From positions 1-64,000 of the IMG/VR virus record IMGVR_UViG_3300032236_001850: a DNA stretch of 64,000 nt. The stretch is one strand, 5' to 3'. Under the pieces are notes generated by a model. That model did not search any database and was not told the origin of the DNA. It saw only the letters and a list, made by a program, of their open reading frames with translations. Numbering within the stretch: position 1 is the stretch's first letter; each line of letters starts with the position of its first letter. Below are positions 5,159 through 51,820 of the stretch, piece by piece. The translations under genes were made by a program, and so were the position numbers.

Positions 5159-5166
5159 TATATATC
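5159..5166 (-). promoter_or_regulatory. GATATATA putative late promoter (lysin/envelope operon)
   Basis: Motif recurs ahead of late-type operons. Confidence 0.65.
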
Positions 5167-5256
5167 CCCCTGGCCCCCAATATTTTTATGATTTTTCTGA
5201 CGTCTCTAACGAAACTTTTTTGACTTTTCCTGTTGAATATTGATAAACAATAAGTT

Positions 5257-5940
5257 ATGAAATATATTTCTATAGATGTGGAAACCAGTGGGTTAGATCC
5301 AGAATCAAATCAAGTTTTATCAATAGGAGCGGTAATTGAGGACACAAATAACCCTTTGCCCTTTGAAGAATGTCCAAAATTTCATGGTGCAATCAAGCAC
5401 GAGGATATAACTGGATCACTCTTTGCAATAAATCTAAATCGTGAGCTGATAGAGACTATAGTTTCTTATCAGACATGTAACAACGACGACGAGAGGAAAG
5501 ACGTCGAGAAAGCATCAGGAATGAAGTTTTATCATAAGGATGATATAGTTGAAGCTTTTTATCATTTTCTTTATCTTAATGGTATGGTTAATGTTGATCC
5601 CGATATGAACCTTCTGGAGAGAGTGATGAAACTAAATGACGATGGGAAATCTGTTCCTGTACTTACCTCCAGAATAAAACCCACCCACATAACAGTGGCT
5701 GGTAAGAATTTTGCTACCTTTGATAAACATTTTCTGGAGAGATTACCTAGATGGAAACAGGTAATTAGAATCAAACAAAGAATACTAGATCCTGCCATTT
5801 TGTATATTGATTGGAAAAATGATACTAGTCTTCCTTCACTGGGACAATGTAAAGAAAGAGCAGGAATTCACGGTATCGTGACTCACAATGCCTTGGAGGA
5901 CGCATGGGATGTTGTTGAATTATTAAGAAAAAAATACTAA
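5257..5940 (+). CDS. DEDDh 3'-5' exonuclease (DnaQ-like)
   Basis: IDVETSG, GKNFATFD, HNALEDA motifs. Confidence 0.85.
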   Translation: MKYISIDVETSGLDPESNQVLSIGAVIEDTNNPLPFEECPKFHGAIKHEDITGSLFAINLNRELIETIVSYQTCNNDDERKDVEKASGMKFYHKDDIVEAFYHFLYLNGMVNVDPDMNLLERVMKLNDDGKSVPVLTSRIKPTHITVAGKNFATFDKHFLERLPRWKQVIRIKQRILDPAILYIDWKNDTSLPSLGQCKERAGIHGIVTHNALEDAWDVVELLRKKY

Positions 5941-6210
5941 ATGAATTACACAAGACCAAACAACGAGGGATATAAGGATTCACCAGAGGATTGGCTAAAT
6001 TCTGCACTGATATTTAGTAGAACCATTTCTCTTCTACTTGAAGAGAACGAGGGTGTTGTTGTATCGATTAAAGGTGATGCAATAAATCCAATAAATCCCA
6101 AAAGTGACCGTGTCGTTGTCTTCTATAAGGATAGACAGATACACATCGATGATATACAAGATCCGAATCTCAAGGAGGGTGATTTTATTAGAATAGTTGA
6201 AGAAAATTAA
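5941..6210 (+). CDS. Hypothetical protein
   Basis: Intact ORF abutting neighbours. Confidence 0.7.
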   Translation: MNYTRPNNEGYKDSPEDWLNSALIFSRTISLLLEENEGVVVSIKGDAINPINPKSDRVVVFYKDRQIHIDDIQDPNLKEGDFIRIVEEN

Positions 6211-6221
6211 ATTATATAAAA

Positions 6222-6935
6222 ATGGAAGAAAAAAACAAAAAAATTAAGGAAGAAAATGTTGATGTGGCAAAGCAAACTGAGATAGTTGTTGTTCTGGATA
6301 GATCTGGATCAATGGCAAGTATTTCAAAATCCACAGTAGATGGATTCAATTCTTTTCTTAATGAACAGCAAAATGCCGAGGGTGAAGCTTTTATGACTCT
6401 GGTTCAGTTTGATGACAGATACGAGATTGACTATAAAAGTGTTCCAGTAAAAGATGTTAATCCATTAATAGATGGAGAAACATTTAAGCCTAGAGGAATG
6501 ACCGCTCTGTTAGATGCTATTGGTAAAACAATTAATGAGCTGGAAACTGACAGGGATGTTGTTTTTGTAATCATTACCGATGGTGATGAAAACTCAAGTA
6601 GAGAATACCAGAGAGATGCGATTATGAATATGATCAAAACCCTGGAGGACGAGAAAGGTTGGTATTTCTTATTCTTAGGAGCAAATCAGGATGCCATTGC
6701 AGCTGGTGGGAATATGGGTATCACCGGAAACAAATCATTTACGTATAGTGCTGATGATATCGGTACCGCTAACGCATTTGCTTCATTCTCTAGTAACATC
6801 TCAAACTACAGATCAGCCAAAATGAACTATTCCGCTATGAACATGGATAAAAATATTTCATTAAATGATTTGCAGGATCTTAAAATGAATCTGGATTTCA
6901 GCGAGGATCAAAGAAAAGAACAAGACAAAAAGTAA
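6222..6935 (+). CDS. vWA domain protein (TerY-like)
   Basis: MIDAS DRSGS, GMTALLDAIG, IITDG. Confidence 0.88.
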   Translation: MEEKNKKIKEENVDVAKQTEIVVVLDRSGSMASISKSTVDGFNSFLNEQQNAEGEAFMTLVQFDDRYEIDYKSVPVKDVNPLIDGETFKPRGMTALLDAIGKTINELETDRDVVFVIITDGDENSSREYQRDAIMNMIKTLEDEKGWYFLFLGANQDAIAAGGNMGITGNKSFTYSADDIGTANAFASFSSNISNYRSAKMNYSAMNMDKNISLNDLQDLKMNLDFSEDQRKEQDKK

Positions 6936-7141
6936 TGATTAAGGATCTATCCGATGAAGATCTGGACATGGCGATCTTCGAAATGAATGTTTGGAATGTT
7001 ATAAATGATCTTGATGATCGAATAATAGAACTAGACTCCAGGACTGAACTTTCCGACGAGGAAAGAGATGAACTGGAAAGATCCAAGACGAGATTAGAAG
7101 ATCTTTTGAAAAGAATAAACAATAAAAAAGGACTCAAATGA
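6935..7141 (+). CDS. Hypothetical coiled-coil protein
   Basis: TAATG overlap with the vWA gene. Confidence 0.7.
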   Translation: MIKDLSDEDLDMAIFEMNVWNVINDLDDRIIELDSRTELSDEERDELERSKTRLEDLLKRINNKKGLK

Positions 7142-7152
7142 GTCCTTTTTTA
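7123..7152. terminator. Bidirectional intrinsic terminator
   Basis: AAAAAAGGACTC-AAAT-GAGTCCTTTTTT between convergent genes. Confidence 0.9.
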
Positions 7153-7169
7153 ATTTATAGATATATGGA

Positions 7170-9003: not shown

Positions 9004-9024
9004 AACTATTATTATTTTTATATG

Positions 9025-9040
9025 TGGATATATATATCCA
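9025..9040. promoter_or_regulatory. Palindrome TGGATATATATATCCA giving GATATATA on both strands (putative divergent late promoter)
   Basis: Perfect 16-bp palindrome between divergent genes starting at 9003 (-) and 9061 (+). Confidence 0.75.
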
Positions 9041-9060
9041 AATCTAATATTATATTTATT

Positions 9061-10725: not shown

Positions 10726-10745
10726 TAACAAAACTCTAATTAAAA

Positions 10746-15738: not shown

Positions 15739-17180
15739 TGACCACAAAGAAAAAGAAAAAACCAATAGTTGATATAGACGTTCTAAACTCGGATCAGAGG
15801 GAAGCTTTTGAAGAGTTGAGAGATTTTATATGCGACAGGGATGACGAAAATGTTTATGTTCTTAAGGGTTGGGCAGGTACAGGTAAAACCTTTTGTATAA
15901 GCGTTCTCGTTAGATACATTTTGGAAGTGGTGCATCCTAAAAGCGCTTGGTATAAAATAGCTGTAACTGGACCTACTAATAAATCGGTTAGAGTTATAAA
16001 GAAGACAAGCAATCTAAGAAATCCTAGAGTTACTTTCCAAACAATACACAAGCTTCTTGGTTTAACCGAGAAGATAACCAATGATGGGCAGCAAGTTTTT
16101 GTCAACCAGGAGAAGAACTTCAAACCACAGATCAACTCTGTGAAGCTTCTAATCATAGACGAGGTTTCCATGCTTAATGATGATCTTTTTCATGAGATCC
16201 TTAAATATCGGGACAAGCTAAAGATTATCTGCATGGGTGATCCAGCACAGATACCACCAGTGGGTAAACCTGACTGTATCCCGTTCAGAGACGAGTTAGC
16301 TGATCCTTATGGTATTAAAACTCTTCAACTCAAAAAGATAATGAGACAGAAAGAGGGTAATGCCATCATAGATTCCTCTGTGCTTATTCGTGAAGATCTT
16401 TGGTCTGAAAGAAATCCAGTTAAGCCTGTTACCTCTCTAAATTCACTTGGCGAGGGTGTGGAATTTTTAAATCTTAATGATGGGGAGACAAGGAAGGGCT
16501 TCGGTGATATTCTTGCCAAATATTTCAGATCAGAAGAATTTAAGGATGATTCTGAGTACTGCAAGATTATAGCATGGAGAAATAAAACGGTTTCCAGCAT
16601 GAATAATCTTGTTAGAAGAATCATATTCGGAGAGGATGAATGTAGATCTAAGATACTCGTTGGTGAAAAGTTAATTGCAAATTCTCCGGTTATAATTCAG
16701 GGGAATCTGATACTATTTAATACCAATGATGAATTTTCTGTTGAGTCTACCAAGATAAGGGAGATGAACATGGTTCTAAAAACATTCTCCCCCGTTATAG
16801 AAGTGAAACTAAAGTTCTATGATGCCGTGGTTAGCTATCTTAATGACGAGGATGAGATTGAGAAGACCTCAATAGAAATACTACATGAGGATAGTGAAGC
16901 CGAATTTTCCAAAATTGCAAACCTACTTAAACTGAAGGCAATAGAAAAGAAGGGCAGGGATAGAAGCTGGATAGATTACTACGATTTTATGAGAAACTTT
17001 GCTGATGTTAGCTTTGCATATGCAATAACAGCACACAAAAGCCAAGGGAGCACTTATAACACAACATTTGTACTGGAAGATGATATAGATGTAAACATCA
17101 ACGTTGTTGAAAGAAACAGAATCAAATATACTGCCTACACAAGATCAAGTAAAAAGGTTTACATATTGAAAAGATTTTAA
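15738..17180 (+). CDS. dda: SF1B DNA helicase (Dda/RecD-like)
   Basis: GWAGTGKT, IIDEVSM, MGDPAQIPPV, YAITAHKSQGST; start at MTTKK. Confidence 0.85.
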   Translation: MTTKKKKKPIVDIDVLNSDQREAFEELRDFICDRDDENVYVLKGWAGTGKTFCISVLVRYILEVVHPKSAWYKIAVTGPTNKSVRVIKKTSNLRNPRVTFQTIHKLLGLTEKITNDGQQVFVNQEKNFKPQINSVKLLIIDEVSMLNDDLFHEILKYRDKLKIICMGDPAQIPPVGKPDCIPFRDELADPYGIKTLQLKKIMRQKEGNAIIDSSVLIREDLWSERNPVKPVTSLNSLGEGVEFLNLNDGETRKGFGDILAKYFRSEEFKDDSEYCKIIAWRNKTVSSMNNLVRRIIFGEDECRSKILVGEKLIANSPVIIQGNLILFNTNDEFSVESTKIREMNMVLKTFSPVIEVKLKFYDAVVSYLNDEDEIEKTSIEILHEDSEAEFSKIANLLKLKAIEKKGRDRSWIDYYDFMRNFADVSFAYAITAHKSQGSTYNTTFVLEDDIDVNINVVERNRIKYTAYTRSSKKVYILKRF

Positions 17181-18379
17181 ATAAGCCCTTGATTTAGTTT
17201 CCTTCCAATATTAACAGTTTGTCTAGTTACACCAATTTTTTTCATTATTCTATCTTGCATTTCTTGGAATCCATCGATCTTGTATAATTCTAGCGGATTC
17301 TTTTTGTAGAAATCACAAATTTTATCAAAATATTTTCTATGAAAATCATCAAGGCTTACATTATCTATATAATCTCGTATTAGGTCACTATAAATATTTG
17401 GTAAAATTGATGATAAATCAGTCATACCAAATATGGTATTAACATGTTCTAAAAATCTTAAAGAAAGAACATTGCCCCAACTACCATACCTGTCACACGT
17501 TATTTTGGTTATAGATAGGAGATTGTCAATAATGCATTTTTTTATAATGTCAACAACCTCCTCTGAAGTTGATTTGTTGGATATCTGTAAAAGAATGGTC
17601 CCGTTACTTCTCCTTGTAATGCTTGTTTTTTTTCCATAAACGTATTCGACGGTAATCCAGCTATGTAAGGCGCTATGAAAGTTATTCATAAACACATTTA
17701 AAATAAAATGATCATCCTCCTCTTCCTCGTTTATGGCAAATAAATTTTTTAATATAGCATCCCTAAGACCGCTATGCAGCGTGGGTGAGATAGTATATCT
17801 TTTATTCCCCAAAGTAAGTAGTTGATTATTTATTAATATTTGACTTTTTTTACCATGTTCATTAAAAGTGGCGTGGTACCCAAGATCTACCGAGAATTTG
17901 TTACATATATCTGCTATTTCCCTTAAATCTGCAGGTTCTGTAATTCCAGAATTTTGTTTTATGATTGATTCTATTTCACTTTTGGATTTACCAAGGATCC
18001 TTTTAATTCCTATTTCTTCTATTTTTTTAATAAGATTTTCCTTTTTTATCCCATTGATTGCTACCATTTTTGATATAAGATATAGGTATAAGCTATTTAA
18101 ACATTCGTTTAGAGATGGAAATGCTCTGTCAACAAAAGTATTTCCCTGGGATACGCATTTATATGCATACCCACCATCACCGGTTGGATAAAGCATTGTC
18201 TTGGAGCCGACACCATTCATATGAATAAAACCGCTGGATTTTACATCGAATGTTATGAATCCTGGTTGTTTAAGTGCCATTATTCCATTCATCGTTTCAT
18301 TTCTTCCCAATTCTCTGGTTAGCTCGGCAGCTTGTTCTTTCTTGCTTGCCTCGAATAATCTGAAGTTTAATATTTTCAT
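17177..18379 (-). CDS. Hypothetical protein with capsid-targeting-like leader
   Basis: MKILNFRLFE/A; GATATATAG just upstream. Confidence 0.8.
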   Translation of the reverse strand: MKILNFRLFEASKKEQAAELTRELGRNETMNGIMALKQPGFITFDVKSSGFIHMNGVGSKTMLYPTGDGGYAYKCVSQGNTFVDRAFPSLNECLNSLYLYLISKMVAINGIKKENLIKKIEEIGIKRILGKSKSEIESIIKQNSGITEPADLREIADICNKFSVDLGYHATFNEHGKKSQILINNQLLTLGNKRYTISPTLHSGLRDAILKNLFAINEEEEDDHFILNVFMNNFHSALHSWITVEYVYGKKTSITRRSNGTILLQISNKSTSEEVVDIIKKCIIDNLLSITKITCDRYGSWGNVLSLRFLEHVNTIFGMTDLSSILPNIYSDLIRDYIDNVSLDDFHRKYFDKICDFYKKNPLELYKIDGFQEMQDRIMKKIGVTRQTVNIGRKLNQGLI

Positions 18380-18383: not shown

Positions 18384-18391
18384 TATATATC
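18384..18391 (-). promoter_or_regulatory. GATATATA putative late promoter
   Basis: 4 nt upstream of the ATG at 18379. Confidence 0.65.
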
Positions 18392-18408: not shown

Positions 18409-18440
18409 TTTTTTTATTTCGCGAATCTTTCATATGTTTG
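18409..18440 (+). promoter_or_regulatory. Conserved 32-bp promoter (copy 2)
   Basis: TTTTTTTATTTCG-N11-TATGTTTG. Confidence 0.85.
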
Positions 18441-19642: not shown

Positions 19643-19676
19643 ATAAAAAACCCAATCTGATGATTGGGTTTTTTAT
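19643..19676. terminator. Bidirectional intrinsic terminator
   Basis: ATAAAAAACCCAATC-TGAT-GATTGGGTTTTTTAT between convergent genes. Confidence 0.9.
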
Positions 19677-20644
19677 TAATCGTCAAATTCTGTTAATGCT
19701 CCGACTGGGGCAAATATTATTTTACCAAATGGTGGTTTATTGTACATTTGTGGTGAACATATAAACCAAATGACCTTATTCACATATTTTTTAATATTGA
19801 ATTGACTTTCTTTTGGCATTTCACCACCAGTATCCGTTAAATAAATAAAAACCGAGGGGTTTATTTTTTCATCTTCAACGTATTTGAAAGGAGGTAGAAA
19901 TCCACAATCGTTACCCCCTGTGGTTGCCCATTTGGAAAGATCCGGAAGTTGACCTCTTTTAATATTTACTTTATCAACATTATCTATTTGATCGCTACAG
20001 TATATAATATAAAGTGTATCGCACTTAAACTTTTTTGCTAAAAAGACAACCTCGTTAATAAAGGTCTTTGATTGGTTTTCCGATATCGAACCTGAAGTAT
20101 CGACTGCAGCAACTATTGTTTTCAATGTTTCCACTCCGCTTCTTTTCTGTCCATATATTGCTGTTCCTCCGGCTATAAATCTTCTATTTGGAAAAACCCA
20201 ATCCATTTTATTTACCGCCTTGTCAAAGAATCTTTTTAATTCTCCTTTCCAATCAACTAGAGCTGTTGTTCCTATTGAAGAATCAAGCATGGATCTTATG
20301 CTATCTGTTACTGCTCCCCCGTTAGTTGAAAGAGCCGATGCTGTTATTTTTCCCCAATCCGGCATTTTTATTTTTTTGTCGTAGGTTGTTGATTTTTTAT
20401 CTCCCTTATATTCTTTAGCATCAGTTTTTATAAGCTTTCCCTTGTTAGCAACATCGTTTGTTGTCGCAGCAGAATCACTTCCCTTACCAGTTGCTTTTGG
20501 AATATCTGACATAATATTGGGATTTTCTGAGAATTCAACATTCCCAATTTCCCCTTCCGGTTCACCATTATTGTTAACTTTTTCTCCTCCCTTTTTGGAG
20601 TCTTTTTTATTAACTACTGAATATTGACCTTTTTTTACTAACAT
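19676..20644 (-). CDS. vWA-like domain protein (DUF2201 C-terminal type)
   Basis: IVAAVDTSGSIS, GGND, FIYLTDTGG; DWK.EL.RF preceding motif. Confidence 0.8.
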   Translation of the reverse strand: MLVKKGQYSVVNKKDSKKGGEKVNNNGEPEGEIGNVEFSENPNIMSDIPKATGKGSDSAATTNDVANKGKLIKTDAKEYKGDKKSTTYDKKIKMPDWGKITASALSTNGGAVTDSIRSMLDSSIGTTALVDWKGELKRFFDKAVNKMDWVFPNRRFIAGGTAIYGQKRSGVETLKTIVAAVDTSGSISENQSKTFINEVVFLAKKFKCDTLYIIYCSDQIDNVDKVNIKRGQLPDLSKWATTGGNDCGFLPPFKYVEDEKINPSVFIYLTDTGGEMPKESQFNIKKYVNKVIWFICSPQMYNKPPFGKIIFAPVGALTEFDD

Positions 20645-20647: not shown

Positions 20648-21664
20648 TTAAATTTCTATATCGCCGTTATTGTACACTTTTTTTATTGTACCACTTCCAC
20701 CTGATTTTAATACTACCTTATCGCCAACCTTAGGTAATAGTTTTCCGTTACTTTCCCCTGGTTTACCTTCTCCAGGTTTTCCTTCACCTTCTCCAGGTTC
20801 TCCGTTACCTTCCCCTTCTCCAGGTTCTCCGTTACCTTCTCCAGGTTCTCCATCACCTTCTCCAGGTTCTCCATCACCTTCTCCAGGTTCTCCATCACCT
20901 TCTTCATCTCCATCTCCATCTCCATCACCTTCTTCTGATTCTCCATCACCTTCCCCAGGTTCTCCTTCTCCAGATTCGTTATCTCCTTCCGCATCTTCCT
21001 GTTCATCTGAATCGTTTTTTCCCTCTTGTACTTGAAGATCTTCATTTGCTTCCGGTGTTTTCTCCTCTGGATCGTTAACTTCGCCCATCGCTGCCTGCAT
21101 CATAAGCTGATCTATTCTATTCATTGCTCCATCCTCTAAGAGTAGCTGGTAAATATCTTCAGCTCTCATACCAGCATATTTTCTTTCGTATAATCCAGCT
21201 TCCTTACCGCCCATTATTGGTTTTTTCCATTTACCGTTTATGAAATTGTCGTCGTGAATTAATAGCGGGTTTATTGCATAATCACAAGCAACGTTCCATA
21301 ATCTTGGATCTCTATTCTCTCTTCTTATATTATGCTGAAACATACAATGAAGAACCTCATGTGCAAGAACAAATCTTAGTGCTTCATCCGATTGATCCTG
21401 CACAAATTTTGGATGGAATATAATGGAAATTCCATTTGTGCACATTGTTGGTGGATCTATTTTATCTGAACCATAGATATCCAAATGCGCCAGCAATCTT
21501 CCGTAAAGATTTGCATTAAGATTAAGCCATAAAATGGCTCGCTTCATCTTTTTGTTTATCTCCTCAGAATCATAGGATTCCGACTCGTTTATGGCTTTAA
21601 TGTAAACATTAAAGCTAGTTATAGCCTTTCCTATGCCGGATCTAGTTTCTAATAATCTTTCCAT
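20648..21664 (-). CDS. Putative HExxH metallopeptidase (DUF2201_N type) with acidic repeat linker
   Basis: TMCTNG, FVLAHEVLHCMFQH, WNVACDYAIN; C-terminal KVGDKVVLKSGG small beta-barrel. Confidence 0.8.
   Translation of the reverse strand: MERLLETRSGIGKAITSFNVYIKAINESESYDSEEINKKMKRAILWLNLNANLYGRLLAHLDIYGSDKIDPPTMCTNGISIIFHPKFVQDQSDEALRFVLAHEVLHCMFQHNIRRENRDPRLWNVACDYAINPLLIHDDNFINGKWKKPIMGGKEAGLYERKYAGMRAEDIYQLLLEDGAMNRIDQLMMQAAMGEVNDPEEKTPEANEDLQVQEGKNDSDEQEDAEGDNESGEGEPGEGDGESEEGDGDGDGDEEGDGEPGEGDGEPGEGDGEPGEGNGEPGEGEGNGEPGEGEGKPGEGKPGESNGKLLPKVGDKVVLKSGGSGTIKKVYNNGDIEI
20755..20965. repeat. Coding tandem repeat, about 21-nt unit (G[DN]GEPGE)
   Basis: Directly visible; TTCTCCAGGTTCTCCATCACC units. 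Confidence 0.9.
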
Positions 21665-21669: not shown

Positions 21670-23166
21670 TTATATGTGTCCACTTGATTTTAATTTCCCC
21701 GTTAATAGAACAACAGCATCTCTTTTTGGACCTTCTTTATCTGTTGGAAGCGGTGTAAATTCTGGGAATTTACCAAGTATTAATGTTTTGTACATCCAGG
21801 ATAAAACTTCATTTTCATCATATCTAGAAATGTATTTTAATGCATTGTAAATTTTAGTAGGATCATACTCCTCTATTCTACCAAGTAGTAATGTTGCTAT
21901 ACCGTAAAGAACTGCGATGTCTGTCTTTGCTTTCATTACCAATGGAACATCGTCTGGATCTTCTAATATTCTATCAAGATCACTTTCCGGTATTTCTTTA
22001 AGAACTTTAAGGTAGTCTACGAAATCTGTTGCTCCTTCTATACCAACGGATGGTGAGAATATGTCAAATATTTGATCCATTGGAAGTTGTCTCCAGTTTT
22101 TCAAACCTTTAATTTTTAATTTACCAGCTAATTTAAGTGCTCCATCGGTCCAAGATCTAGGTGATGGATAAACTTTACCTTGATCTGGATCATTCTTATG
22201 AAATAAATGTTTCTTTCTCATAATGAATGCAGGTAATTCTGGTAATATTTTACTGTGTCCTACTGCAAATTCTTCCCATTCTTCTGGTTTAGGCACAAAG
22301 TTATAAACATCAAATCTATTTGCAAGAGCTGTCGACATTGGGTGGATATCAGCATCCGGGTCATCCTCTTGTCTGTTACCAGCTCCAACTATAATCCATT
22401 TATCAGGTAATTGGTAATCACCAATTCTGCCAGCTTGTACGAATTTAAGAAGCACATTATAGATTGGACCTTGAGCTCTGTTCATCTCATCAAGGAATAC
22501 TATACCACCTTTTCCATTCTCACCGTTATCTCTTGGTAATATAGATGGCGGGTTATCTCTGGTAAATCCTGAACCTGGATCGATAATAGCACCATTTTTA
22601 ACAACAGATGGTGTTATCTCGTGCTGTGATGGTATACCTCTAAAATCCTCAGGCAACATTGTTTCCAAATCTAGGAATAGGAAATTACATCCTATTTTGG
22701 AAGCTGCTTCAACCACAATTTCAGTTTTACCAATACCTGGTGCACCGTACATAAAAATAGGTTTTGCTCTTTCTCCTGCAACTTTTAATTCATATAGATC
22801 AATGATTTGGTTTTGTAGAAATTTACCTGATTTATCTATCGGGTTACCAGATTTAACTCCCCCTGGCCAACCAGTTCCAACCACAGCCTCATCTAGAGAT
22901 TCAGTAATACCAACTTCTCCAAAGAAATTTCTAAATTGGTCCAGAATAGGTCCATTCTCAGGCACAAATAACATGGCTCCAGGAAGTCCTTTTTTAGGAC
23001 CTCTTTTAATTTTTCTAATTTTATCATTTGCAAGAAGCTCAAAGAAATCCTTTGTCCATCCTGTGAATTTATCTATAACATTTGCTTTTAACCAGCTAAA
23101 AAGTCCTTCGTTGACCATGTATGATTCATTAACATAATCCTGAAAATTAAAAATTCTTTTTTTCAT
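21670..23166 (-). CDS. MoxR-family AAA+ ATPase with capsid-targeting-like leader
   Basis: GAPGIGKT, FLDEMNRA, ALANRF; N-term MKKRIFNFQDYVNE/S..VNE/G. Confidence 0.88.
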   Translation of the reverse strand: MKKRIFNFQDYVNESYMVNEGLFSWLKANVIDKFTGWTKDFFELLANDKIRKIKRGPKKGLPGAMLFVPENGPILDQFRNFFGEVGITESLDEAVVGTGWPGGVKSGNPIDKSGKFLQNQIIDLYELKVAGERAKPIFMYGAPGIGKTEIVVEAASKIGCNFLFLDLETMLPEDFRGIPSQHEITPSVVKNGAIIDPGSGFTRDNPPSILPRDNGENGKGGIVFLDEMNRAQGPIYNVLLKFVQAGRIGDYQLPDKWIIVGAGNRQEDDPDADIHPMSTALANRFDVYNFVPKPEEWEEFAVGHSKILPELPAFIMRKKHLFHKNDPDQGKVYPSPRSWTDGALKLAGKLKIKGLKNWRQLPMDQIFDIFSPSVGIEGATDFVDYLKVLKEIPESDLDRILEDPDDVPLVMKAKTDIAVLYGIATLLLGRIEEYDPTKIYNALKYISRYDENEVLSWMYKTLILGKFPEFTPLPTDKEGPKRDAVVLLTGKLKSSGHI

Positions 23167-23190: not shown

Positions 23191-23198
23191 TATATATC
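23191..23198 (-). promoter_or_regulatory. GATATATA putative late promoter (MoxR operon)
   Basis: Recurrent motif. Confidence 0.65.
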
Positions 23199-23208: not shown

Positions 23209-23240
23209 TTTTTATATTCCGAAAGAATTTATTACTTTTG
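23209..23240 (+). promoter_or_regulatory. Conserved 32-bp promoter (copy 3)
   Basis: TTTTTATATTCCG-N11-TACTTTTG. Confidence 0.85.
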
Positions 23241-29879: not shown

Positions 29880-29887
29880 GATATATA
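29880..29887 (+). promoter_or_regulatory. GATATATA putative late promoter
   Basis: 4 nt before the ATG at 29892. Confidence 0.65.
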
Positions 29888-31239: not shown

Positions 31240-31256
31240 CCGTTTTATTTTTGGCT

Positions 31257-32756
31257 CTATTTGGCCCTTTTGTTAAATTCTCCCATCATTTCCTCTCTGT
31301 CTGCTATAAGCTCTCTCATTCTTGTCAAACTCTGAATAAAACTAGGATCAAGTCCATTGGTATCTTCATAATCATCAATAAGTGATTCCATGCTTTCCCA
31401 TCCTCCTATAGAGGTCTCTTTGATTTCATCAATTTCAGATTTTGTGTAATCCTTACCTATAATTGCATCAAATACTCTCCATCCTGCAATTGTATAAATC
31501 CCTTGACCTATAAACCAATCCATAAAATCTGATTTTGGTATTTTCTTATTGTTGTAGATTATCTCTGAAACCGTTCCAGCAATCTTATTCCAGATACCCT
31601 CCGGCATTTCACCTGCAAGATCACCTTTACTTGCACCTAATAATGCCTCAATTATTTGATCTTTGTTTTTACTTTTGTATAACTGTGAAAGTGACTTCTT
31701 TATTGCAAATTCTGAATCTAGTGAATCTACTATGGTGTCAACTAAGGATTTTGGATAACCCAATTTGGTAAAATGTTCCTCTGGTGAATTGCTTTTTTTA
31801 ATGTTTACATCGTTTATATCATGTGAATCTGTAACAGATCCAGCAAATGATACGGTGTTACCAGTTAGAAAAAGAGGATCTGCTGGATCTATTCCAAAAT
31901 TAAATATATTAATCTGTAGACCCTTGGAAGAATACCCTTCGAATGAACCCCTATTGATACACCAGTTTGCAACGGCGCATAATTTTTTCTGTGCGTCTTC
32001 GGTTCGGATTGTCATTACTAAATATTTATCGTCAGAGTAAATAATACCTGCTTCAGGCTCAAGACTTTCAAGTTCATCAATTTTCTTTTTCATCCCAAGA
32101 TTTGAAAACCCACCAATGTAATTTGATATGTATTGAATCACATCGTCAATTTTCCATCTCTCCATGGATTTTATTTTTTCAAAAAGACGATCTATAGCAG
32201 ATTTACCAAGTTCTTGTAATTGAACTGCCATGGTGATTACTTTTTTCTGTTTTTCTGTATCCAATGAACGATATTGATCTCTTAATCCCTTAGGTAGCGA
32301 ATTTACAAACCATTTAGATTCTTTTTCTCTCTCTATAGTTCTAATTTCGTCGGTCAACTGTTCAAATCCGCTTATTCCCTCTCCTCTTTCTTCATTAGCA
32401 AATTTTTCAATAGGTTTACTCAATTGTTGAACTATATACTTCTTAGTTGTTATCGTGTCAAGTAATTGCTTTAATGATCTTACCTCCTCAGTATCTGTGG
32501 AAAGAGCCACAGGTATACCCTGATCAAAGTGAAATTTCACAAAAGGTAAAACGTATCCAGGATGATTTTTCAAAAGATTCATTATTGCCTGGTAAGATCC
32601 ATTTTTCAATGCTTCTTCCTTTTCTTCGGGAGTTAGTTGATTAGTTTCTTTTTTGTGTATTTTTGCATATCTTTTTTGCATATAAGCCTTTGCAGCAGAT
32701 ATGTTCTCATTTAAACTCCAATCTACAAAGGATTCAAATATATAGGATTTTCTCAT
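31257..32756 (-). CDS. Hypothetical protein, paralog of 9061..10725, capsid-targeting-like leader
   Basis: MRKSYIFESFVDWSLNE/N; shared blocks. Confidence 0.85.
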   Translation of the reverse strand: MRKSYIFESFVDWSLNENISAAKAYMQKRYAKIHKKETNQLTPEEKEEALKNGSYQAIMNLLKNHPGYVLPFVKFHFDQGIPVALSTDTEEVRSLKQLLDTITTKKYIVQQLSKPIEKFANEERGEGISGFEQLTDEIRTIEREKESKWFVNSLPKGLRDQYRSLDTEKQKKVITMAVQLQELGKSAIDRLFEKIKSMERWKIDDVIQYISNYIGGFSNLGMKKKIDELESLEPEAGIIYSDDKYLVMTIRTEDAQKKLCAVANWCINRGSFEGYSSKGLQINIFNFGIDPADPLFLTGNTVSFAGSVTDSHDINDVNIKKSNSPEEHFTKLGYPKSLVDTIVDSLDSEFAIKKSLSQLYKSKNKDQIIEALLGASKGDLAGEMPEGIWNKIAGTVSEIIYNNKKIPKSDFMDWFIGQGIYTIAGWRVFDAIIGKDYTKSEIDEIKETSIGGWESMESLIDDYEDTNGLDPSFIQSLTRMRELIADREEMMGEFNKRAK

Positions 32757-32762
32757 AATTTT

Positions 32763-33332
32763 TTATTTCTTTTTCTTAGCTGCTTTTGCTTTTTTAGCTT
32801 GTTTATAAAGAGCTCCATCGCTAACTTCGGTTGTTCTACCTCCAACTATGAAGGAATTAACTCTAGCAAATCCCCACTGTTCAGGATTTGTTCCAGGCAC
32901 GTGTCCTTTTTTCCATGCTGCATAACCCCGATCGAAAATTTTTCTTAATATACCAAGAGGAAATCCAGATTTTTTAGCTTTATTTTTTAAAGCAACAGAA
33001 ACTTTAGAATCCTCAAATAGAGACTCTTCGTTGTTAAGTTCTTCAAACACTTCGAAAGCTGCCCACTCGATTTCGGAATTAAATTTCTCAATCGGCACTA
33101 TATTTCTAGCTGTATCAAAATCCTCACTCTCCCCGTACATCTCCTTGAATTTCTTGGTGTACTTACTTGGCTTTGTTGGTACTTTTTTACCCTTACCTGC
33201 TTTACCACTTTTGTAGTCTGCATCCCAAGGACCGTATGCTGAATCATCATTATCAGCTTTGTTTCCATGTTTTTTGATTTCTCTTTTCATTATGTCCGGA
33301 TTTGTTGTTAGGTATTTCTTTGGGTATTTCAT
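32763..33332 (-). CDS. Basic hypothetical viral protein
   Basis: C-term LKNKAKKSG..LRKIFDRG.AAW..GH.PG...QWGFARVNSF, recalled as a conserved viral domain of unknown function. Confidence 0.7.
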   Translation of the reverse strand: MKYPKKYLTTNPDIMKREIKKHGNKADNDDSAYGPWDADYKSGKAGKGKKVPTKPSKYTKKFKEMYGESEDFDTARNIVPIEKFNSEIEWAAFEVFEELNNEESLFEDSKVSVALKNKAKKSGFPLGILRKIFDRGYAAWKKGHVPGTNPEQWGFARVNSFIVGGRTTEVSDGALYKQAKKAKAAKKKK

Positions 33333-33338
33333 ATGAAT

Positions 33339-34205
33339 TTATGCTTTGATTATTTTATGATATTGGCCGTAGTTATTTATTGCCCATCTAACAACTATAT
33401 TTAGATCAGGATTGCCGAATAATATTTTTCCATTTTTCCCGCATATTATATATCTAAATGGATCATTTTTAAATTCTATGAGTATTATATCTTTAGCATC
33501 CCTCCCATTAAAAATCACTTGGTGCTCCTTATCCTTTTCGTGCCAAACTCTAATTCCAGAAGCTCTAAACAGTACTGCATAATTTCCATATCTATGTTGG
33601 TATCCGTATGCTGTAGGATATAAATAATGCTTGGGAAAGTCATCAATAGTAAATCCAAAATTATAGCCTCCCTCCACTTTATCAGAAGCTGGCAAGCCTC
33701 TTGTACATGCCAAGTCATCTATATTTTTAGCTCCGAGTTTGAATCCGGATTTGCTAATTTCTTTAGCGGCATTACTAAAATGTATGAGCCATTGATTTTT
33801 AAGTATTTCTGGTGATTTAAACCACCTCCAGGAGGGATATTTGTTTGGCCTTATGGGTAGAGTTTCTTTCTCTATTTTATCATATAGGTATTCTGCAAAT
33901 TTATCGTAGGTTTTCTTATCGTTTTTTTCTAACCAAGATATTATTTTATTTTCTCCGGCCTCCCTTGGACCTTCAAATTTATACCCAGTATCTAAAACAA
34001 AATCGTTAAAAAGGTGTGAATATTTATACGGGAGTGGATTCTTCTTCGAAGCCTTTGAAGATTTAAGATATTCGTTAAATTTTATTAATTCATTTGTTAA
34101 AAATTCATTTATTATTCGAGATCCAGTAAAACTCTTAAGAGTATCTGAACCCGTAAATTCTTTAAACAATTTAAGTGATTTCATGGTTGTTATATTTTTA
34201 TCCAA
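33339..34205 (-). CDS. Hypothetical protein with repeated targeting-like motifs
   Basis: MKSLKLFKEF..IINEF..LIKFNEYL; alternative start 34184. Confidence 0.75.
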   Translation of the reverse strand: MDKNITTMKSLKLFKEFTGSDTLKSFTGSRIINEFLTNELIKFNEYLKSSKASKKNPLPYKYSHLFNDFVLDTGYKFEGPREAGENKIISWLEKNDKKTYDKFAEYLYDKIEKETLPIRPNKYPSWRWFKSPEILKNQWLIHFSNAAKEISKSGFKLGAKNIDDLACTRGLPASDKVEGGYNFGFTIDDFPKHYLYPTAYGYQHRYGNYAVLFRASGIRVWHEKDKEHQVIFNGRDAKDIILIEFKNDPFRYIICGKNGKILFGNPDLNIVVRWAINNYGQYHKIIKA

Positions 34206-34918
34206 TCTCTGAATCTTATGATTGATTCATTTAGTGTTTCTTTAAAGTTGAATACCTTCATAAATTTAGCAAAATCAGCTTTGTAACCTCTCTGTGTTTC
34301 GTCATATTCATCTTTGGTGTATTGCCAATTGAATGAAAGTTGCTCTGGTGTTTTAAATCCGAAAAATTTAAGTACTTCTCTCTCGGTCTTAACAGCAACT
34401 TCTCCATTCCAATTATGGCCTATTGCAACCACACCACATTCTTTATCTTTTAGCAGATTGGATTCCCCAAGAGTTGTGTGTCTGTTTTCCAACCAGGTCA
34501 ATCTCTCAATTAATTGTGCGTAGATTGCATTCATCTTACCCCATCTGATAGAACCAAAGAATATAATTATATCAGCGTCATAGATGGCATTTGCAACTTT
34601 ATACATTTCGTCTGTTTTGTTGTTTATTGCTGCCCAGCATCTTATGAATTTCTCCGGATTATTGCTTTTTAACATTGCATCCTTAACTCCGCAATGATTA
34701 CCGTCCCTTGTTGAAACATTACCTTCACAAGGAAATATTTTAAGTTTACTAACATCTATAATTTCAGCATTCTTAAGCTTCTTTTTTAGCTCCGCTGCAA
34801 TCATCGATGACTTTGGCAATTCCTTCTCACCACTCCATCTATTGGATGTTGTCAGAAAAAGTATTTTCTTTTTCTTATCTTTCTTTATGTAGTTATAAAG
34901 TCTTTTCAATTTATCCAT
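34190..34918 (-). CDS. Flavodoxin-fold protein (NADPH-dependent FMN reductase / iron-sulfur flavoprotein-like)
   Basis: ILFLTTSNR..SS, IFPCEG..C..C Cys motif, DADIIIFFGSIRWG; ends TLNE/SIIRFRDWIKI. Confidence 0.8.
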   Translation of the reverse strand: MDKLKRLYNYIKKDKKKKILFLTTSNRWSGEKELPKSSMIAAELKKKLKNAEIIDVSKLKIFPCEGNVSTRDGNHCGVKDAMLKSNNPEKFIRCWAAINNKTDEMYKVANAIYDADIIIFFGSIRWGKMNAIYAQLIERLTWLENRHTTLGESNLLKDKECGVVAIGHNWNGEVAVKTEREVLKFFGFKTPEQLSFNWQYTKDEYDETQRGYKADFAKFMKVFNFKETLNESIIRFRDWIKI

Positions 34919-34922: not shown

Positions 34923-34930
34923 TATATATC
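34923..34930 (-). promoter_or_regulatory. GATATATA putative late promoter
   Basis: 4 nt upstream of the ATG at 34918. Confidence 0.65.
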
Positions 34931-34935: not shown

Positions 34936-34967
34936 TTTTTTTTATCCGCAAGAATGTTTTATATTTG
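34936..34967 (+). promoter_or_regulatory. Conserved 32-bp promoter (copy 4)
   Basis: TTTTTTTTATCCG-N11-TATATTTG. Confidence 0.85.
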
Positions 34968-45163: not shown

Positions 45164-45194
45164 AAAAAGGACCAGTACACTGGTCCTTTTTTTT
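45164..45194 (+). terminator. Intrinsic terminator
   Basis: AAAAAGGACCAG-TACA-CTGGTCCTTTTTTTT. Confidence 0.9.
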
Positions 45195-45199: not shown

Positions 45200-45207
45200 A
45201 ATATATA
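45200..45207 (+). promoter_or_regulatory. AATATATA(G) variant of putative late promoter
   Basis: One mismatch to GATATATA; precedes an operon of targeting-motif genes. Confidence 0.5.
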
Positions 45208-47561: not shown

Positions 47562-47576
47562 TAATTAAAAAAATTC

Positions 47577-47636: not shown

Positions 47637-47654
47637 CAATATAATAATTGCAAT

Positions 47655-47870: not shown

Positions 47871-47873
47871 ATT

Positions 47874-48089: not shown

Positions 48090-48092
48090 AAA

Positions 48093-49513: not shown

Positions 49514-49992
49514 AAATGAATCCACTGGTAGTTGCAGCATTCCCTGGATCTGGGAAATCCTATTATAGTGAAGAATTGGATCAGTCCGGATCTTCAGTAT
49601 CAGTTGAGGTTTCTGATCTGCTATTAAAATATTACAGCTTCAATACAGAAAGAGTTAATTTAGAAATTAGTGAGATCTACCAGAAATATTCATTATTTAT
49701 AGATGAGAAAATAAATGATGGCTACTCTATAATTTTTATCCCTGCATTCTATGATGATGTATTGGAACTGATGAGATTCGAAAAGTACCGGATCGTTTTA
49801 GTTTACCCGAAACAGGATCTCCTTAATGAGTACCTGACAAGATACAAATCCCGAGGAAGTGACGGGATCTATATAGAAAAGATCTCGAGAGAATGGAACG
49901 ATTCCCTTGATAAATTAAAATCAATAGCTGGATGCAGACATATAGAGTTGAATAGCATGCAATACATATCGGATATAATAAAAGATCTTTAA
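49510..49992 (+). CDS. P-loop kinase-like protein
   Basis: VVAAFPGSGKS. Confidence 0.7.
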   Translation: MKMNPLVVAAFPGSGKSYYSEELDQSGSSVSVEVSDLLLKYYSFNTERVNLEISEIYQKYSLFIDEKINDGYSIIFIPAFYDDVLELMRFEKYRIVLVYPKQDLLNEYLTRYKSRGSDGIYIEKISREWNDSLDKLKSIAGCRHIELNSMQYISDIIKDL

Positions 49993-49994
49993 AA

Positions 49995-50912
49995 ATGAAA
50001 AGAAATCTAAAAAAAATAATCATGAACTCAGATCTCCCAATGACCAGCGGTCCGTTACTCAGATTTGATCAGGAGACAGCTGATAAGATAACAGAGAGTG
50101 GGAAAGAAACCATCAGGGAAGCCATCAAGGTTGTCAGTGCAGGAATATATGGGGAGGTAGGAGACAAATCAGATTTTAAGAAGATGCTGGAGTCATGGAA
50201 CCCAGTTGATTCGCTTGGATCCGGAGAGCCAGAGCAATTAACACAGGAGGAGATCGACGAGAGACAGGCTTATATAGACGACACCAAAAATGGATACTCT
50301 GAAGCTGCCGTTCATAAGATACTCAAGGATCTAAAGATTGACGAACCTGTTCTCAATATCTATAGATACGGAAGCCGAATCTATGGAACTGCTGATCAGA
50401 ATTCAGATCACGATTACATCATAGTTACCAGAGGAGCTATGCTTAAGAGTGGTGCTTTTAAACAGAATGCCATCTCCAGCGAAAACCGTAACATCCAAGG
50501 AATCCTTTATTCCAGAAGCGGATTTACGGATGCTATCAACAACTACGATATTAGTGCATTGGAATGCCTATCATTACATCCTGATGATGTGGTTAAAAGC
50601 ACTTGGCCTTTCAAGGTTCAAAAATGGGACAATAAGGTGATGACAAAAAAGATCATCTCGAAAGTTTCAGCATCCTGGCACACTGCTGACATGCAGGCTA
50701 AAGATGGATTCAAAGATCGTGCTAAGAAGGGTATTTTTCATGCACTTAGAATTCTGCACTTTGCATTACAGTTGAAGGAGAATCAGAAGATTGATGACTT
50801 TGGATGTGTTAACTATATCTGGGAGGATTTTAAATTGATTCCAGATGAGGAGTTTGATACCAGAGACTATATCAAGGAGAGGGATGAACTAATGGAAGAA
50901 TTAAGATCATGA
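49995..50912 (+). CDS. Pol-beta-superfamily nucleotidyltransferase with helical C-terminal domain
   Basis: YGSRIYGTADQNSDHD (GS..DxD). Confidence 0.8.
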   Translation: MKRNLKKIIMNSDLPMTSGPLLRFDQETADKITESGKETIREAIKVVSAGIYGEVGDKSDFKKMLESWNPVDSLGSGEPEQLTQEEIDERQAYIDDTKNGYSEAAVHKILKDLKIDEPVLNIYRYGSRIYGTADQNSDHDYIIVTRGAMLKSGAFKQNAISSENRNIQGILYSRSGFTDAINNYDISALECLSLHPDDVVKSTWPFKVQKWDNKVMTKKIISKVSASWHTADMQAKDGFKDRAKKGIFHALRILHFALQLKENQKIDDFGCVNYIWEDFKLIPDEEFDTRDYIKERDELMEELRS

Positions 50913-51145
50913 TAAAAATAGACGAGAAGAAACTTGACAGATATTACCAGGAATACCTAAATAGTATTGCGGAAAATCCAGAGATTAGTCACAATCTAAA
51001 GAGTCTTGCACCAGTAAATTGGTATAGTACTAGTTTGGTATCGTGTGTCTTTGCATCTATATTGGAAAGTAATTTTCACGACATAGCAACACTCGAAGAA
51101 GTTAAATTTGAAAAATTAGGAAATGAAAATAAAAGCGATTTATAA
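50909..51145 (+). CDS. Hypothetical protein
   Basis: Overlapping gene train. Confidence 0.6.
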   Translation: MIKIDEKKLDRYYQEYLNSIAENPEISHNLKSLAPVNWYSTSLVSCVFASILESNFHDIATLEEVKFEKLGNENKSDL

Positions 51146-51374
51146 AAGAAATTTGAAGATGCCGGAGGGCAAGGTGGCTTCACAAGTTGCACATGCTGTT
51201 AAGAATCTTGGGATCACTCCGATTGATTCGATTATAGTGGTTCTTTGTGTTTCGGATAAGAAGTTTGAAGAGCTTGTTGCGGAACACCCAAATTGCTATG
51301 TACAAACGGATCTAGGTTTAACCTGCGTTGAAAGTGGTACACGTACTGCTGCAGCATGGATAGAGGAGGAATAA
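51123..51374 (+). CDS. pth2: Peptidyl-tRNA hydrolase, Pth2 family (minimal)
   Basis: LKMPEGKVASQVAHA and QTDLGLT.VESGTRTA match Pth2 GK.AAQ..HA and D.G.T...GT.T. Confidence 0.8.
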   Translation: MKIKAIYKRNLKMPEGKVASQVAHAVKNLGITPIDSIIVVLCVSDKKFEELVAEHPNCYVQTDLGLTCVESGTRTAAAWIEEE

Positions 51375-51820
51375 TGGTAAACAAAGTCAACATAAACAAC
51401 AGGAAAGCAAAGTTCGATTTCGAGTTCATTAGAACTCTAACTGCTGGTATGCAGCTGATGGGATCGGAAGTAAAGGCTATCCGAGATGGCAGAGTTTCCT
51501 TTGTGGATTCCTACTGTTACTTCAACGGCAAAGAACTTTTTCTAAAGAATCTAAATATAACTCCAATATCATCTACATATTCTCACGAACCCAACAGGGA
51601 GAGAAGGTTGCTTCTTAATAGAAGTGAACTTAGAAAACTTCAGAATGATATGGACAGAGGAATGACTATAGTTCCTTTTAGAATTTTTACAAATGAGAAG
51701 GGCTTGATCAAACTAGATATCGCACTTGCTAAGGGAAAGAAGAGTTACGACAAAAAAGAAAAAATAAAGGAGGCAGATATAAAAAGGGATACTAAAAGAT
51801 TCATTGCTGGAGATATATAG
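51374..51820 (+). CDS. smpB: SsrA-binding protein
   Basis: NRKAKFDF, AGMQLMGSEVKAIR, RERRLLLNRSE, IALAKGKK..DKK; TAATG-coupled to pth2. Confidence 0.95.
   Translation: MVNKVNINNRKAKFDFEFIRTLTAGMQLMGSEVKAIRDGRVSFVDSYCYFNGKELFLKNLNITPISSTYSHEPNRERRLLLNRSELRKLQNDMDRGMTIVPFRIFTNEKGLIKLDIALAKGKKSYDKKEKIKEADIKRDTKRFIAGDI

What the first reader, a model, noticed from the sequence alone, without database searches (positions are those of the whole stretch)
5159..51819. GATATATA marks a second, apparently late, transcriptional class
Seen: GATATATA occurs at 5159(-), 9027(+), 9031(-), 18384(-), 23191(-), 29880(+), 34923(-) and 51812(+), with a variant at 45200(+). Each copy is 4-35 nt before the first ATG of the endolysin operon, the targeting-peptide operons or the homing endonuclease. 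Known: T4 late promoters are a lone -10-like TATAAATA read by gp55. Inference: this is the late promoter of a gp55-like phage sigma factor. Three minus-strand copies sit back-to-back with the 32-bp plus-strand promoter (18384/18409, 23191/23209, 34923/34936).
Basis: partly seen in the sequence, partly recalled or inferred. Interest (0 to 1): 0.68.

Follow-up and report, generated by a model that had tools for sequence, protein, structure and literature searches.

The report
Late promoter motif of a megaphage
GATATATA is a real, strongly selected start signal for transcription in a 434-kb phage of Bacteroidota; it sits in front of the virion and lysis genes and is most likely read by the phage's own miniature version of the T4 late sigma factor gp55, so it is a new variant of a known system.

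Summary
One copy inside a gene, 33447(-), was missed.

The window alone gives only marginal enrichment (9 copies, 4.4 expected). The window is the first 64 kb of a complete 434,509-bp phage, and genome-wide the signal is overwhelming:
- GATATATA is the 8-mer most enriched in non-coding DNA: 73 of 92 copies lie in 9% of the sequence.
- 67 copies lie fully inside non-coding DNA, against 3-10 expected from the AT-rich non-coding background itself.
- It points toward the downstream gene 46:2.
- It has no -35 partner.
- A conserved A follows 5 nt later.
- That A is the A of the ATG in 13 cases; otherwise the ATG lies mostly 9-25 nt beyond it.

The motif directly precedes the tail sheath, portal, prohead protease plus gp23-like capsid protein, and the endolysin. 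It is conserved at orthologous genes in relatives although the flanks have diverged.

The genome encodes a 119-aa gp55 homologue, whose only PDB match is T4 gp55. No gp33, gp45 or phage RNA polymerase was detected.

Reading: a T4-type late promoter with altered consensus, (G/A)ATATATA against TATAAATA, shared with Mahaphage-type megaphages. Late timing and the sigma assignment are inferred, not measured.

The parts
5159..5166 (-). GATATATA, 18 nt before the ATG (5140) of the endolysin gene 4319-5140(-). This gene is followed by 2359-4293(-), a cohesin/dockerin/T9SS-sorting-domain protein.
   Evidence: Conserved as GATATATA or AATATATA before the endolysin in 4 of 5 related genomes.
9027..9038 (.). 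Palindrome GATATATATATC, which gives one motif copy on each strand. It lies between the divergent starts ATG 9061(+) (554 aa) and ATG 9003(-) (128 aa). Possible bidirectional late promoter.
   Evidence: Both products have no family match.
18384..18391 (-). GATATATA, 4 nt before ATG 18379 of ORF 17177-18379(-) (400 aa, unknown function). Leaderless geometry.
18433..18440 (+). TATGTTTG, the -7 element of the host-type (early) promoter back-to-back with 18384(-). Upstream T-run TTTTTTTAT at about 18409-18417.
   Evidence: class defined
23191..23198 (-). GATATATA, 24 nt before ATG 23166 of a minus-strand cluster: MoxR-like AAA ATPase 21670-23166, DUF2201_N 20648-21664, and VWA-like DUF2201 19676-20644.
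23233..23240 (+). TACTTTTG, the -7 element of the host-type promoter back-to-back with 23191(-).
29880..29887 (+). GATATATA, 4 nt before ATG 29892 of an SLT-domain lytic transglycosylase (29892-30623). Leaderless geometry.
33447..33454 (-). GATATATA inside ORF 33339-34205(-). No gene start fits; probably a chance or inactive copy.
34923..34930 (-). GATATATA, 4 nt before ATG 34918. It heads the minus-strand cluster 30613-34918; the first product is FMN_red-like.
34960..34967 (+). TATATTTG, the -7 element of the host-type promoter back-to-back with 34923(-).
45200..45207 (+). Variant AATATATA directly behind a terminator hairpin (45169-45186) and its T-run. It lies 20 nt before ATG 45228 (240 aa, unknown function) and has A at the +5 position.
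   Evidence: Genome-wide, AATATATA is 21 of 43 non-coding.
51812..51819 (+). GATATATA in the last codons of ORF 51356-51820, 20 nt before ATG 51840 of a 344-aa HTH/LAGLIDADG-like protein.
   Evidence: LAGLIDADG hits below Pfam cut-off

Best explanation
GATATATA, more exactly (G/A)ATATATA-N4-A, is the core promoter of the phage's late gene class.

Proposed sequence of events:
1. The phage has no RNA polymerase of its own. After infection, the host (Bacteroidota) polymerase with the host sigma reads the ~32-bp 'TTTTTTTAT...TAnnTTTG' promoters.
2. In due course a 119-aa phage protein homologous to the sigma-region-2 part of T4 gp55 replaces the host sigma. How its gene is switched on is not settled: a terminator and only an imperfect host-type promoter lie upstream.
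3. Like gp55, this protein needs only an 8-bp -10-region element and no -35 element.
4. Transcription starts at the conserved A, 5 nt behind the motif.
5. In about a fifth of the promoters that A is the A of the start codon, giving leaderless mRNAs. In most others a short (about 9-25 nt), A-rich leader follows.

Shown: the motif's selection, orientation, geometry, position before virion and lysis genes, and conservation in relatives; the gp55 homologue.

For: Selection:
- Top non-coding 8-mer, 73 of 92 copies.
- 67 observed against 3-10 expected from non-coding background models.

Orientation: 46 sense against 2 antisense in co-directional intergenic regions.

Geometry:
- No conserved position upstream.
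- A at +5 behind the motif in 61 of 73 copies, and in 48 of 60 when the leaderless cases are left out.
- A-rich downstream region.
- 65 of 73 non-coding copies have a gene start within 60 nt, and 13 have it exactly at the conserved A.

Genes directly behind it:
- tail sheath, portal, prohead protease with the gp23-like capsid gene next in the operon
- head-closure-like and tail-fibre-like genes
- endolysin and SLT transglycosylase

Conservation:
- Present before the portal gene in nearly all of 80 related contigs, although leader length varies from 16 to about 60 nt.
- Present before the endolysin in 4 of 5 related genomes.
- AATATATA with the same N4-ATG geometry is the top non-coding 8-mer in the 642-kb relative LR756502.

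Reader:
- The 119-aa ORF hits phrog_234, the family of T4 gp55.
- It is 29% identical to gp55 residues 10-123.
- Its only PDB hit is gp55 of 7d7c/7d7d.
- gp55 pocket residues N13, F86, Y97 and T99, which hold A-12, A-9 and A-8 in T4 (PMC7892883), are kept. The bases equivalent to A-12 and A-8 are kept in GATATATA.
- The motif shares 6 of 8 positions with TATAAATA, whose first position is variable in other T4-like phages (PMC1524935).

No beta/beta' or T7-like polymerase was detected.
Against: - There are no transcription start or time-course data. RNA libraries held only contigs of 90-95% relatives.
- No gp33 or gp45 homologue was found with phmmer, PHROG or Pfam models.
- The homologue lacks gp55's C-terminal helix and clamp-binding motif, so the T4 activation mechanism is not supported.
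- Two other phage sigmas exist (300 aa RpoD-like, 222 aa ECF-like) and cannot be excluded as readers.
- Many genes behind the motif are small and of unknown function, so 'late' is established only for the recognisable ones.
- The gp55 gene's own promoter is unclear.
- The control genomes did not ring for the T7-like polymerase family, so that absence is weak.
Confidence: 0.75

Rival explanations
1. The motif is a promoter, but it is read by another sigma: the phage's 300-aa RpoD-like sigma, its 222-aa ECF-like sigma, or an alternative host sigma. The gp55 homologue would then serve another promoter set or none.
For: Three Sigma70_r2-bearing genes are present. No experiment links any of them to a motif. 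TATATA resembles a -10 hexamer.
Against: - Both larger sigmas carry a region 4 (Pfam r4 for the ECF-like one; phrog_351 alignment to residue 294 for the other). They would be expected to need a -35/-33 element, and none is conserved.
- ECF-type AAC/CGT boxes are absent.
- The 8-bp length, the position and the 6/8 identity to the gp55 site favour the gp55 homologue.
Confidence: 0.12
2. The motif is a phage-sigma promoter that is not specifically late. It could be a middle-plus-late or general 'phage mode' class used for most of the infection.
For: - About half of the genes behind it are small ORFs of unknown function.
- It also occurs in tandem behind host-type promoters upstream of tRNA arrays (213669 and 225828).
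- No timing data exist.
Against: - Every recognisable virion and lysis gene that has a promoter directly in front of it has this one.
- Genes with a T4-internal-protein-like N-terminus are 14 of 65 behind it and 0 of 44 behind host-type promoters.
- The sigma genes and the ligase/clamp-loader genes use the host-type promoter.
Confidence: 0.2
3. It is not a core promoter. It is instead a binding site for a repressor or activator, or an RNA-level signal for processing or translation.
For: It lies close to start codons. One copy is palindromic (9027-9038).
Against: - There is no host-type -7 element between the motif and the ATG, and with only 4 nt to the ATG in 13 cases nothing else could serve as promoter.
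- The distance to the ATG varies from 16 to 60 nt among relatives while the motif stays fixed, which argues against a translation signal.
- The motif is asymmetric and strand-specific, 46:2.
Confidence: 0.04
4. The copies are chance occurrences in AT-rich intergenic DNA.
For: Within the 64-kb window alone the excess is marginal: 9 copies against 4.4 expected.
Against: - Genome-wide p = 4e-58.
- 67 observed against at most 13 in 300 shuffles of the non-coding DNA itself.
- Conserved in relatives.
Confidence: 0.01

Closest known systems
Bacteriophage T4 late promoters (TATAAATA, -13 to -6) read by gp55 with gp33 and the sliding clamp gp45
   Same: - An 8-bp A/T element in the -10 region with no -35 element.
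- 6 of 8 bases identical (xATAxATA).
- Placed before head, tail and lysis genes.
- A gp55 homologue with the A-12 and A-8 pocket residues kept.
- Host polymerase is used.

   Different: - G (or A) at the first position and T instead of A at the fifth.
- The element appears to sit 1 nt closer to the start (4 nt, not 5, before +1; inferred).
- The sigma is 119 aa and lacks gp55's fifth helix and clamp-binding tail.
- No gp33 or gp45 was detected.
- Leaderless mRNAs at 13 promoters.
Variant late promoters of other T4-like phages (first position variable in RB49, KVP40, S-PM2; CTAAATA in Aeh1; PMC1524935)
   Same: The same logic applies: the consensus drifts together with a diverged gp55, and the first position is the least constrained. 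Here G and A are both used.
   Different: The alternating ATATATA core, with T at the position where gp55 holds A-9 in T4, was not found in the paper library.
Mahaphage clade / Lak megaphages and 'group 2.2' jumbo phages (PMC7162821; PMC7824862)
   Same: - The closest public genomes by portal and gp55 homologue are LR756500, LR756502 and Lak.
- The literature describes these phages as lacking a polymerase and as encoding a minimal sigma and an RpoD-like sigma.
- (G/A)ATATATA is likewise the leading non-coding 8-mer in 50-kb samples of LR756500 and LR756502.
   Different: - The papers describe genes, not promoters.
- They report a gp33 orthologue in group 2 phages, which I could not detect here.
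- This genome uses the standard code, whereas the Lak gp55 homologue carries in-frame TAG codons.
- The motif was not clear in the Lak sample.
Bacteroidota housekeeping promoters (-33 TTTG / -7 TAnnTTTG; from general knowledge)
   Same: The phage's other promoter class carries a perfect TAnnTTTG, which serves as the contrast class.
   Different: GATATATA has no TTTG, so the host primary sigma is not expected to read it.

Membership tests
T4-type late promoter / gp55 system | Single 8-bp A/T-rich element in the -10 region, with no conserved -35 element | tested here: met
   Logo of 73 non-coding copies: no informative column from -40 to -1.
T4-type late promoter / gp55 system | Consensus TATAAATA | tested here: not met
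   The consensus is GATATATA (AATATATA as a minor form), 6 of 8 identical. GATAAATA is not enriched, 3 of 23 non-coding.
T4-type late promoter / gp55 system | Element at -13 to -6 relative to the transcription start | tested here: inconclusive
   No start-site data exist. The conserved A, and the ATG at exactly that place in 13 promoters, imply -12 to -5. The RNA contigs were uninformative.
T4-type late promoter / gp55 system | Phage-encoded gp55-family sigma (region 2 only) | tested here: met
   - phrog_234, E = 2e-15.
- T4 gp55 is in the same PHROG.
- BLASTP E = 6e-9; phmmer E = 8e-6.
- Only PDB hit is 7d7c chain F, gp55.
- Pfam Sigma70_r2 scores 23.2 bits, just under the 24-bit cut-off.
T4-type late promoter / gp55 system | Co-activator gp33 | tested here: inconclusive
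   No hit with phrog_254 at E <= 10 or with T4 gp33 by phmmer. The protein is small and fast-evolving, and PMC7824862 reports orthologues in this phage group.
T4-type late promoter / gp55 system | Sliding clamp gp45 and a clamp-binding motif on the sigma | tested here: inconclusive
   No hit with phrog_223, PF09116, PF02916 or T4 gp45. A gp44-like clamp loader is present, so some clamp must exist. The sigma lacks gp55's C-terminal 60 residues, which include the clamp-binding motif.
T4-type late promoter / gp55 system | Heads virion-structure and lysis genes | tested here: met
   Sheath, portal, protease plus capsid protein, head-closure-like gene, tail-fibre-like gene, endolysin.
T4-type late promoter / gp55 system | Active late, coupled to DNA replication | not testable with these tools
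   Uncultured phage; only contigs of relatives were present in the RNA libraries.
T4-type late promoter / gp55 system | Host RNA polymerase is used (no phage polymerase) | tested here: met
   No match to RNA_pol_Rpb2_6 or RNA_pol_Rpb1_2, with all 14 control genomes positive. The T7-like family is also silent, but its controls were silent too.
Bacteroidota primary-sigma promoter | TAnnTTTG element at -7 | tested here: not met
   There is no TTTG in or behind the motif. That element defines the phage's other promoter class.

The most novel reading that the evidence does not exclude
Mahaphage-type megaphages of Bacteroidota (this 434-kb phage, LR756500, LR756502 and hundreds of IMG/VR contigs) share a stripped-down late transcription system. 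In it, a 119-124-aa gp55 core that lacks T4's fifth helix and clamp-binding tail reads (G/A)ATATATA by itself, or with an unrecognised partner bound through its short conserved C-terminal tail. It starts many late mRNAs exactly at the AUG, including those of a family of proteins with a T4-internal-protein-like N-terminus. Late transcription would then be uncoupled from the sliding clamp and combined with leaderless translation.
Probability: 0.3. Interest if true: 0.6.

Novelty: new variant of a known kind. Interest (0 to 1): 0.5.

Why it matters
Megaphages of the Mahaphage/Lak type are uncultured, and their infection programme is unknown. A sequence rule that separates host-read (early) from phage-sigma-read (late) transcription units has three uses:
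- Hundreds of unannotated genes can be assigned to a temporal class directly from sequence.
- It predicts which proteins are made with the virion.
- It gives a simple in vitro test: Bacteroidota core polymerase plus a 119-aa protein on a GATATATA template.

It also shows how far the T4 late system can be reduced and how its promoter drifts with the sigma. The promoters placed 4 nt before the ATG give a precise, testable prediction of leaderless late mRNAs.

Tried and rejected
- RNA evidence. The RNA libraries held under 10% of the words. Laying four of them gave only contigs of 90-95% relatives over the protease and capsid genes. One contig begins 31 nt behind the predicted start and nothing lies upstream in three of four runs. 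Contigs cannot show starts, so this counts neither for nor against.
- Conservation of the divergent promoter at 23191. Relatives of the MoxR-like ATPase were only 25-34% identical proteins of unrelated phages, so there was nothing to compare. The endolysin and portal loci were used instead.
- Covariation between the changed fifth base (A to T) and gp55 pocket residue H95 (F here). The same H-to-F change occurs in a cyanophage gp55, so no claim is made.
- The cultured Chryseobacterium phage MA9V-2 (gp55 homologue 35% identical) shows no RATATATA enrichment; other A/T motifs lie before its late genes. The Lak-A1 sample gave no clear motif.
- A megablast of 15 kb of the window against the phage collection found nothing.
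- The crude ORF mask used on the 80 related loci gave a weaker enrichment, 63 of 153. The locus-by-locus view is the better evidence.
- The large protein searches were not used, because family scans settled the proteins that mattered.
- No alternative genetic code was applied to this genome. TAG read-through was used only to delimit the ORF of the Lak-A1 sigma homologue, which carries in-frame TAG codons.

Full report
**What the window is.** The 64-kb window is the first part of a single 434,509-bp virus record with direct terminal repeats, rated complete.
- It has 35% GC and uses the standard genetic code.
- About 580 genes are predicted, nine tenths of them on the plus strand.
- A product in the window carries a type-IX-secretion sorting domain.
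- The phage's main promoter type has the Bacteroidota TAnnTTTG element. Both features point to a Bacteroidota host.
- By portal and sigma proteins, the nearest public genomes are the uncultured 462-735-kb phages LR756500-LR756504 and the Lak phages. This is the Mahaphage clade of PMC7162821.
- IMG/VR holds at least 290 related contigs, some of 340-430 kb.
- DNA holders are pond, freshwater and wastewater metagenomes.

**The observation.** All eight listed copies of GATATATA and the AATATATA variant are at the stated coordinates, 4-27 nt before an ATG.
- A ninth copy, 33447(-), lies inside a gene and was missed.
- 9027 and 9031 are one palindrome.
- The three minus-strand copies at 18384, 23191 and 34923 do sit back-to-back with a plus-strand promoter whose -7 elements are at 18433, 23233 and 34960.

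**Is it more than chance?** In the window alone the excess is marginal: 9 copies against 4.4 expected. The whole genome settles the question.
- Of 92 copies, 73 lie in the 9.1% of positions that are non-coding. This makes GATATATA the most non-coding-enriched of all 8-mers (p = 4e-58).
Markov models of order 1-3 trained on that DNA expect 3.4-9.9. In 300 dinucleotide shuffles the mean is 4.3 and the maximum 13.
- Of the 19 copies that overlap a called ORF, 11 are still within 30 nt of the next gene's start.

**Anatomy.**
- In intergenic regions between co-directional genes the motif points with the genes 46 times and against them twice.
- Nothing is conserved in the 40 nt upstream.
- Five nucleotides behind the motif there is an A in 61 of 73 copies. 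It is A in 48 of 60 when the cases where it belongs to an ATG are removed, against 36% A in non-coding DNA.
- The next 10-15 nt are A-rich.
- Measured from that A, the start codon lies at 0 nt in 13 promoters and mostly 9-25 nt away in the others. Almost nothing falls in between.
- The ATGs at distance 0 are real starts. They open the same conserved N-terminus, M-K/R-x-I/L-x-x-F-E/N, that paralogues with a leader open.
- A transcript that contains these ATGs must begin within the 4 nt behind the motif or at the A. The A is therefore the likely start site, and these mRNAs would be leaderless. This is an inference.
- Single-base variants are tolerated mainly at position 1. AATATATA is 21 of 43 non-coding, and about half of those copies have promoter geometry.

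**What lies behind the motif.** The genes directly behind it include:
- the tail sheath, one of two tandem portal genes, and the prohead protease, whose operon continues with the gp23-like major capsid gene
- a head-closure-like protein and a tail-fibre-like protein
- in the window, the endolysin and an SLT transglycosylase

Fourteen of 65 first genes carry the N-terminus named above. From memory it resembles the capsid-targeting sequence of T4 internal proteins. None of the 44 first genes behind the other promoter type carries it.

The other type has the form TTTTTTTAT, about 17 nt, then TAnnTTTG, with about 56 copies. It heads two sigma genes, the DNA ligase/clamp-loader unit, nucleotide-metabolism genes and the tRNA arrays.

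Most minus-strand gene islands are headed by GATATATA, often back-to-back with a host-type promoter.

**Conservation.**
- In 80 related contigs (portal 66-97% identical) GATATATA stands before the portal gene in nearly all. The rest of the spacer has diverged, and the leader varies from 16 to about 60 nt. A fixed motif at a variable distance from the ATG fits a promoter, not a translation signal.
- Before the endolysin gene, four of five related genomes have GATATATA or AATATATA at 16-20 nt.
- In a 50-kb sample of LR756502 (642 kb), AATATATA is the top non-coding 8-mer (29 of 37). It again often lies exactly 4 nt before an ATG, including genes with the same N-terminus.
- In LR756500, GATATATA is 6 of 7 non-coding.
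- A cultured Chryseobacterium phage with a more distant sigma homologue lacks the motif.

**The reader of the motif.**
- No beta or beta' polymerase domain is present, with all 14 control genomes positive. A T7-like polymerase was not found either, but that control was silent.
- Three sigma-family genes are present: a 300-aa RpoD-like protein and a 222-aa ECF-like protein, both behind host-type promoters, and a 119-aa protein at 281,665-282,024.
- The 119-aa protein matches phrog_234 (E = 2e-15), the family to which T4 gp55 belongs.
- It aligns with gp55 residues 10-123 at 29% identity. Its only match in the Protein Data Bank is gp55 in the T4 late transcription complex 7d7c/7d7d.
- It is followed by a gp4-like head-completion gene, then GATATATA and the portal genes.
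- In T4, gp55 holds the non-template bases A-12, A-9 and A-8 in pockets formed by N13, F86, H95, Y97 and T99. A gp55 without its C-terminal region still forms open complexes and gives basal transcription (PMC7892883).
- Here N13, F86, Y97 and T99 are kept and H95 is F. In the T4 register the motif keeps A-12 and A-8 and has T at -9.
- T4's TATAAATA occupies -13 to -6, and its first position is variable in other T4-like phages (PMC1524935). GATATATA shares the other positions except the fifth.
- The two larger sigmas have a region 4 and would be expected to need an upstream element, which is absent. The gp55 homologue is therefore the most economical reader.

**Differences from T4.**
- The homologue, like those of LR756500, LR756502 and Lak, is only 119-124 aa. 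It lacks gp55's fifth helix and clamp-binding motif.
- Neither gp33 nor gp45 was detected by phmmer, PHROG or Pfam models, although a gp44-like clamp loader is present.
- Iyer et al. report gp33 orthologues in this group of jumbo phages, so a diverged one may have been missed.
- The gp55 gene itself has no clear promoter. A terminator and an imperfect host-type element lie upstream.
- Late timing rests only on the kinds of genes served.

**Verdict.** This is a T4-type late promoter with a new consensus, in a clade whose transcription programme has not been described in the papers I could search. It is a new variant of a known kind: useful, and with a neat leaderless twist, but not a new principle.

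Noticed in passing
window 13199, 34960, 36152, 54841, 56379, 57445, 62388 (+), and about 50 more in the genome: The host-type promoter is unusually uniform: ATTTTTTTAT-tcCGAAa-N-TAtaTTTG-C. It is often followed by GTAATTAAAA, which is itself 31 of 49 non-coding and may mark the start of an A/T-rich leader.
   Followed up: partly
genome 181,000-193,300 (L010/L011): A cluster of about 11 promoters keeps the TAnnTTTG element but replaces the upstream T-run with CTTTAACG-N8-CGTTG, an AACG/CGTT palindrome. This may be a third (middle?) class that depends on a dimeric DNA-binding activator, analogous to MotA-dependent T4 middle promoters.
   Followed up: partly
genome 282,552-284,186 and 284,191-285,843 (L016:6552-9840): Two tandem portal paralogues, both matching phrog_213 (E = 3.5e-55 and 5e-68).
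   Followed up: no
genome 204,386-205,288(-), 274,045-274,713(+), 281,665-282,024(+): Three phage sigma factors: RpoD-like 300 aa, ECF-like 222 aa, and gp55-like 119 aa. The promoter sets of the first two are unknown.
   Followed up: partly
genome 210,000-229,000 (L012, L013): About 31 tRNA genes lie in arrays. Two arrays are preceded by a host-type promoter with GATATATA about 22 nt behind it (213639/213669 and 225798/225828), which suggests early and late expression.
   Followed up: partly
genome-wide, e.g. 127970(-), 130689(-), 170614(-), 175532(+), 212651(+), 300591(+): A family of otherwise unrelated proteins shares the N-terminus M-K/R-x-I/L-x-x-F-E/N: 24 of 582 genes, and 14 of 65 late first genes. 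One of them is the gene right behind the capsid gene. From memory this resembles the T4 capsid-targeting sequence of internal proteins. It is also seen in LR756502.
   Followed up: partly
window 2359-4293(-): The 644-aa protein behind the endolysin combines cohesin and dockerin-like domains with a type-IX-secretion C-terminal sorting domain. This is an odd product for a phage late operon.
   Followed up: no
genome 379,129-380,532 and 394,859-396,004: T4 DNA polymerase (gp43) matches two separate ORFs 14 kb apart, so the family-B polymerase appears to be split. The Chryseobacterium phage MA9V-2 also has two polymerase ORFs.
   Followed up: no
genome 87,367-88,128 and 419,725-419,841: Two further matches to the gp23 capsid family: a 297-aa paralogue above the cut-off, and a short match below it.
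   Followed up: no
relatives L033-L109, upstream of the portal gene: In most relatives the portal leader carries a conserved block, AATATCAATCGAAATTAAT, right behind GATATATA. This genome lacks it. It may be a regulatory leader element.
   Followed up: no
C-termini of the gp55 homologues (this phage, LR756500, LR756502, Lak-A1): All end in an acidic stretch followed by a short hydrophobic tail (..SYNV, ..IYSI, ..LHSL, ..IHSF). This might be a minimal partner- or clamp-binding peptide; speculative.
   Followed up: no
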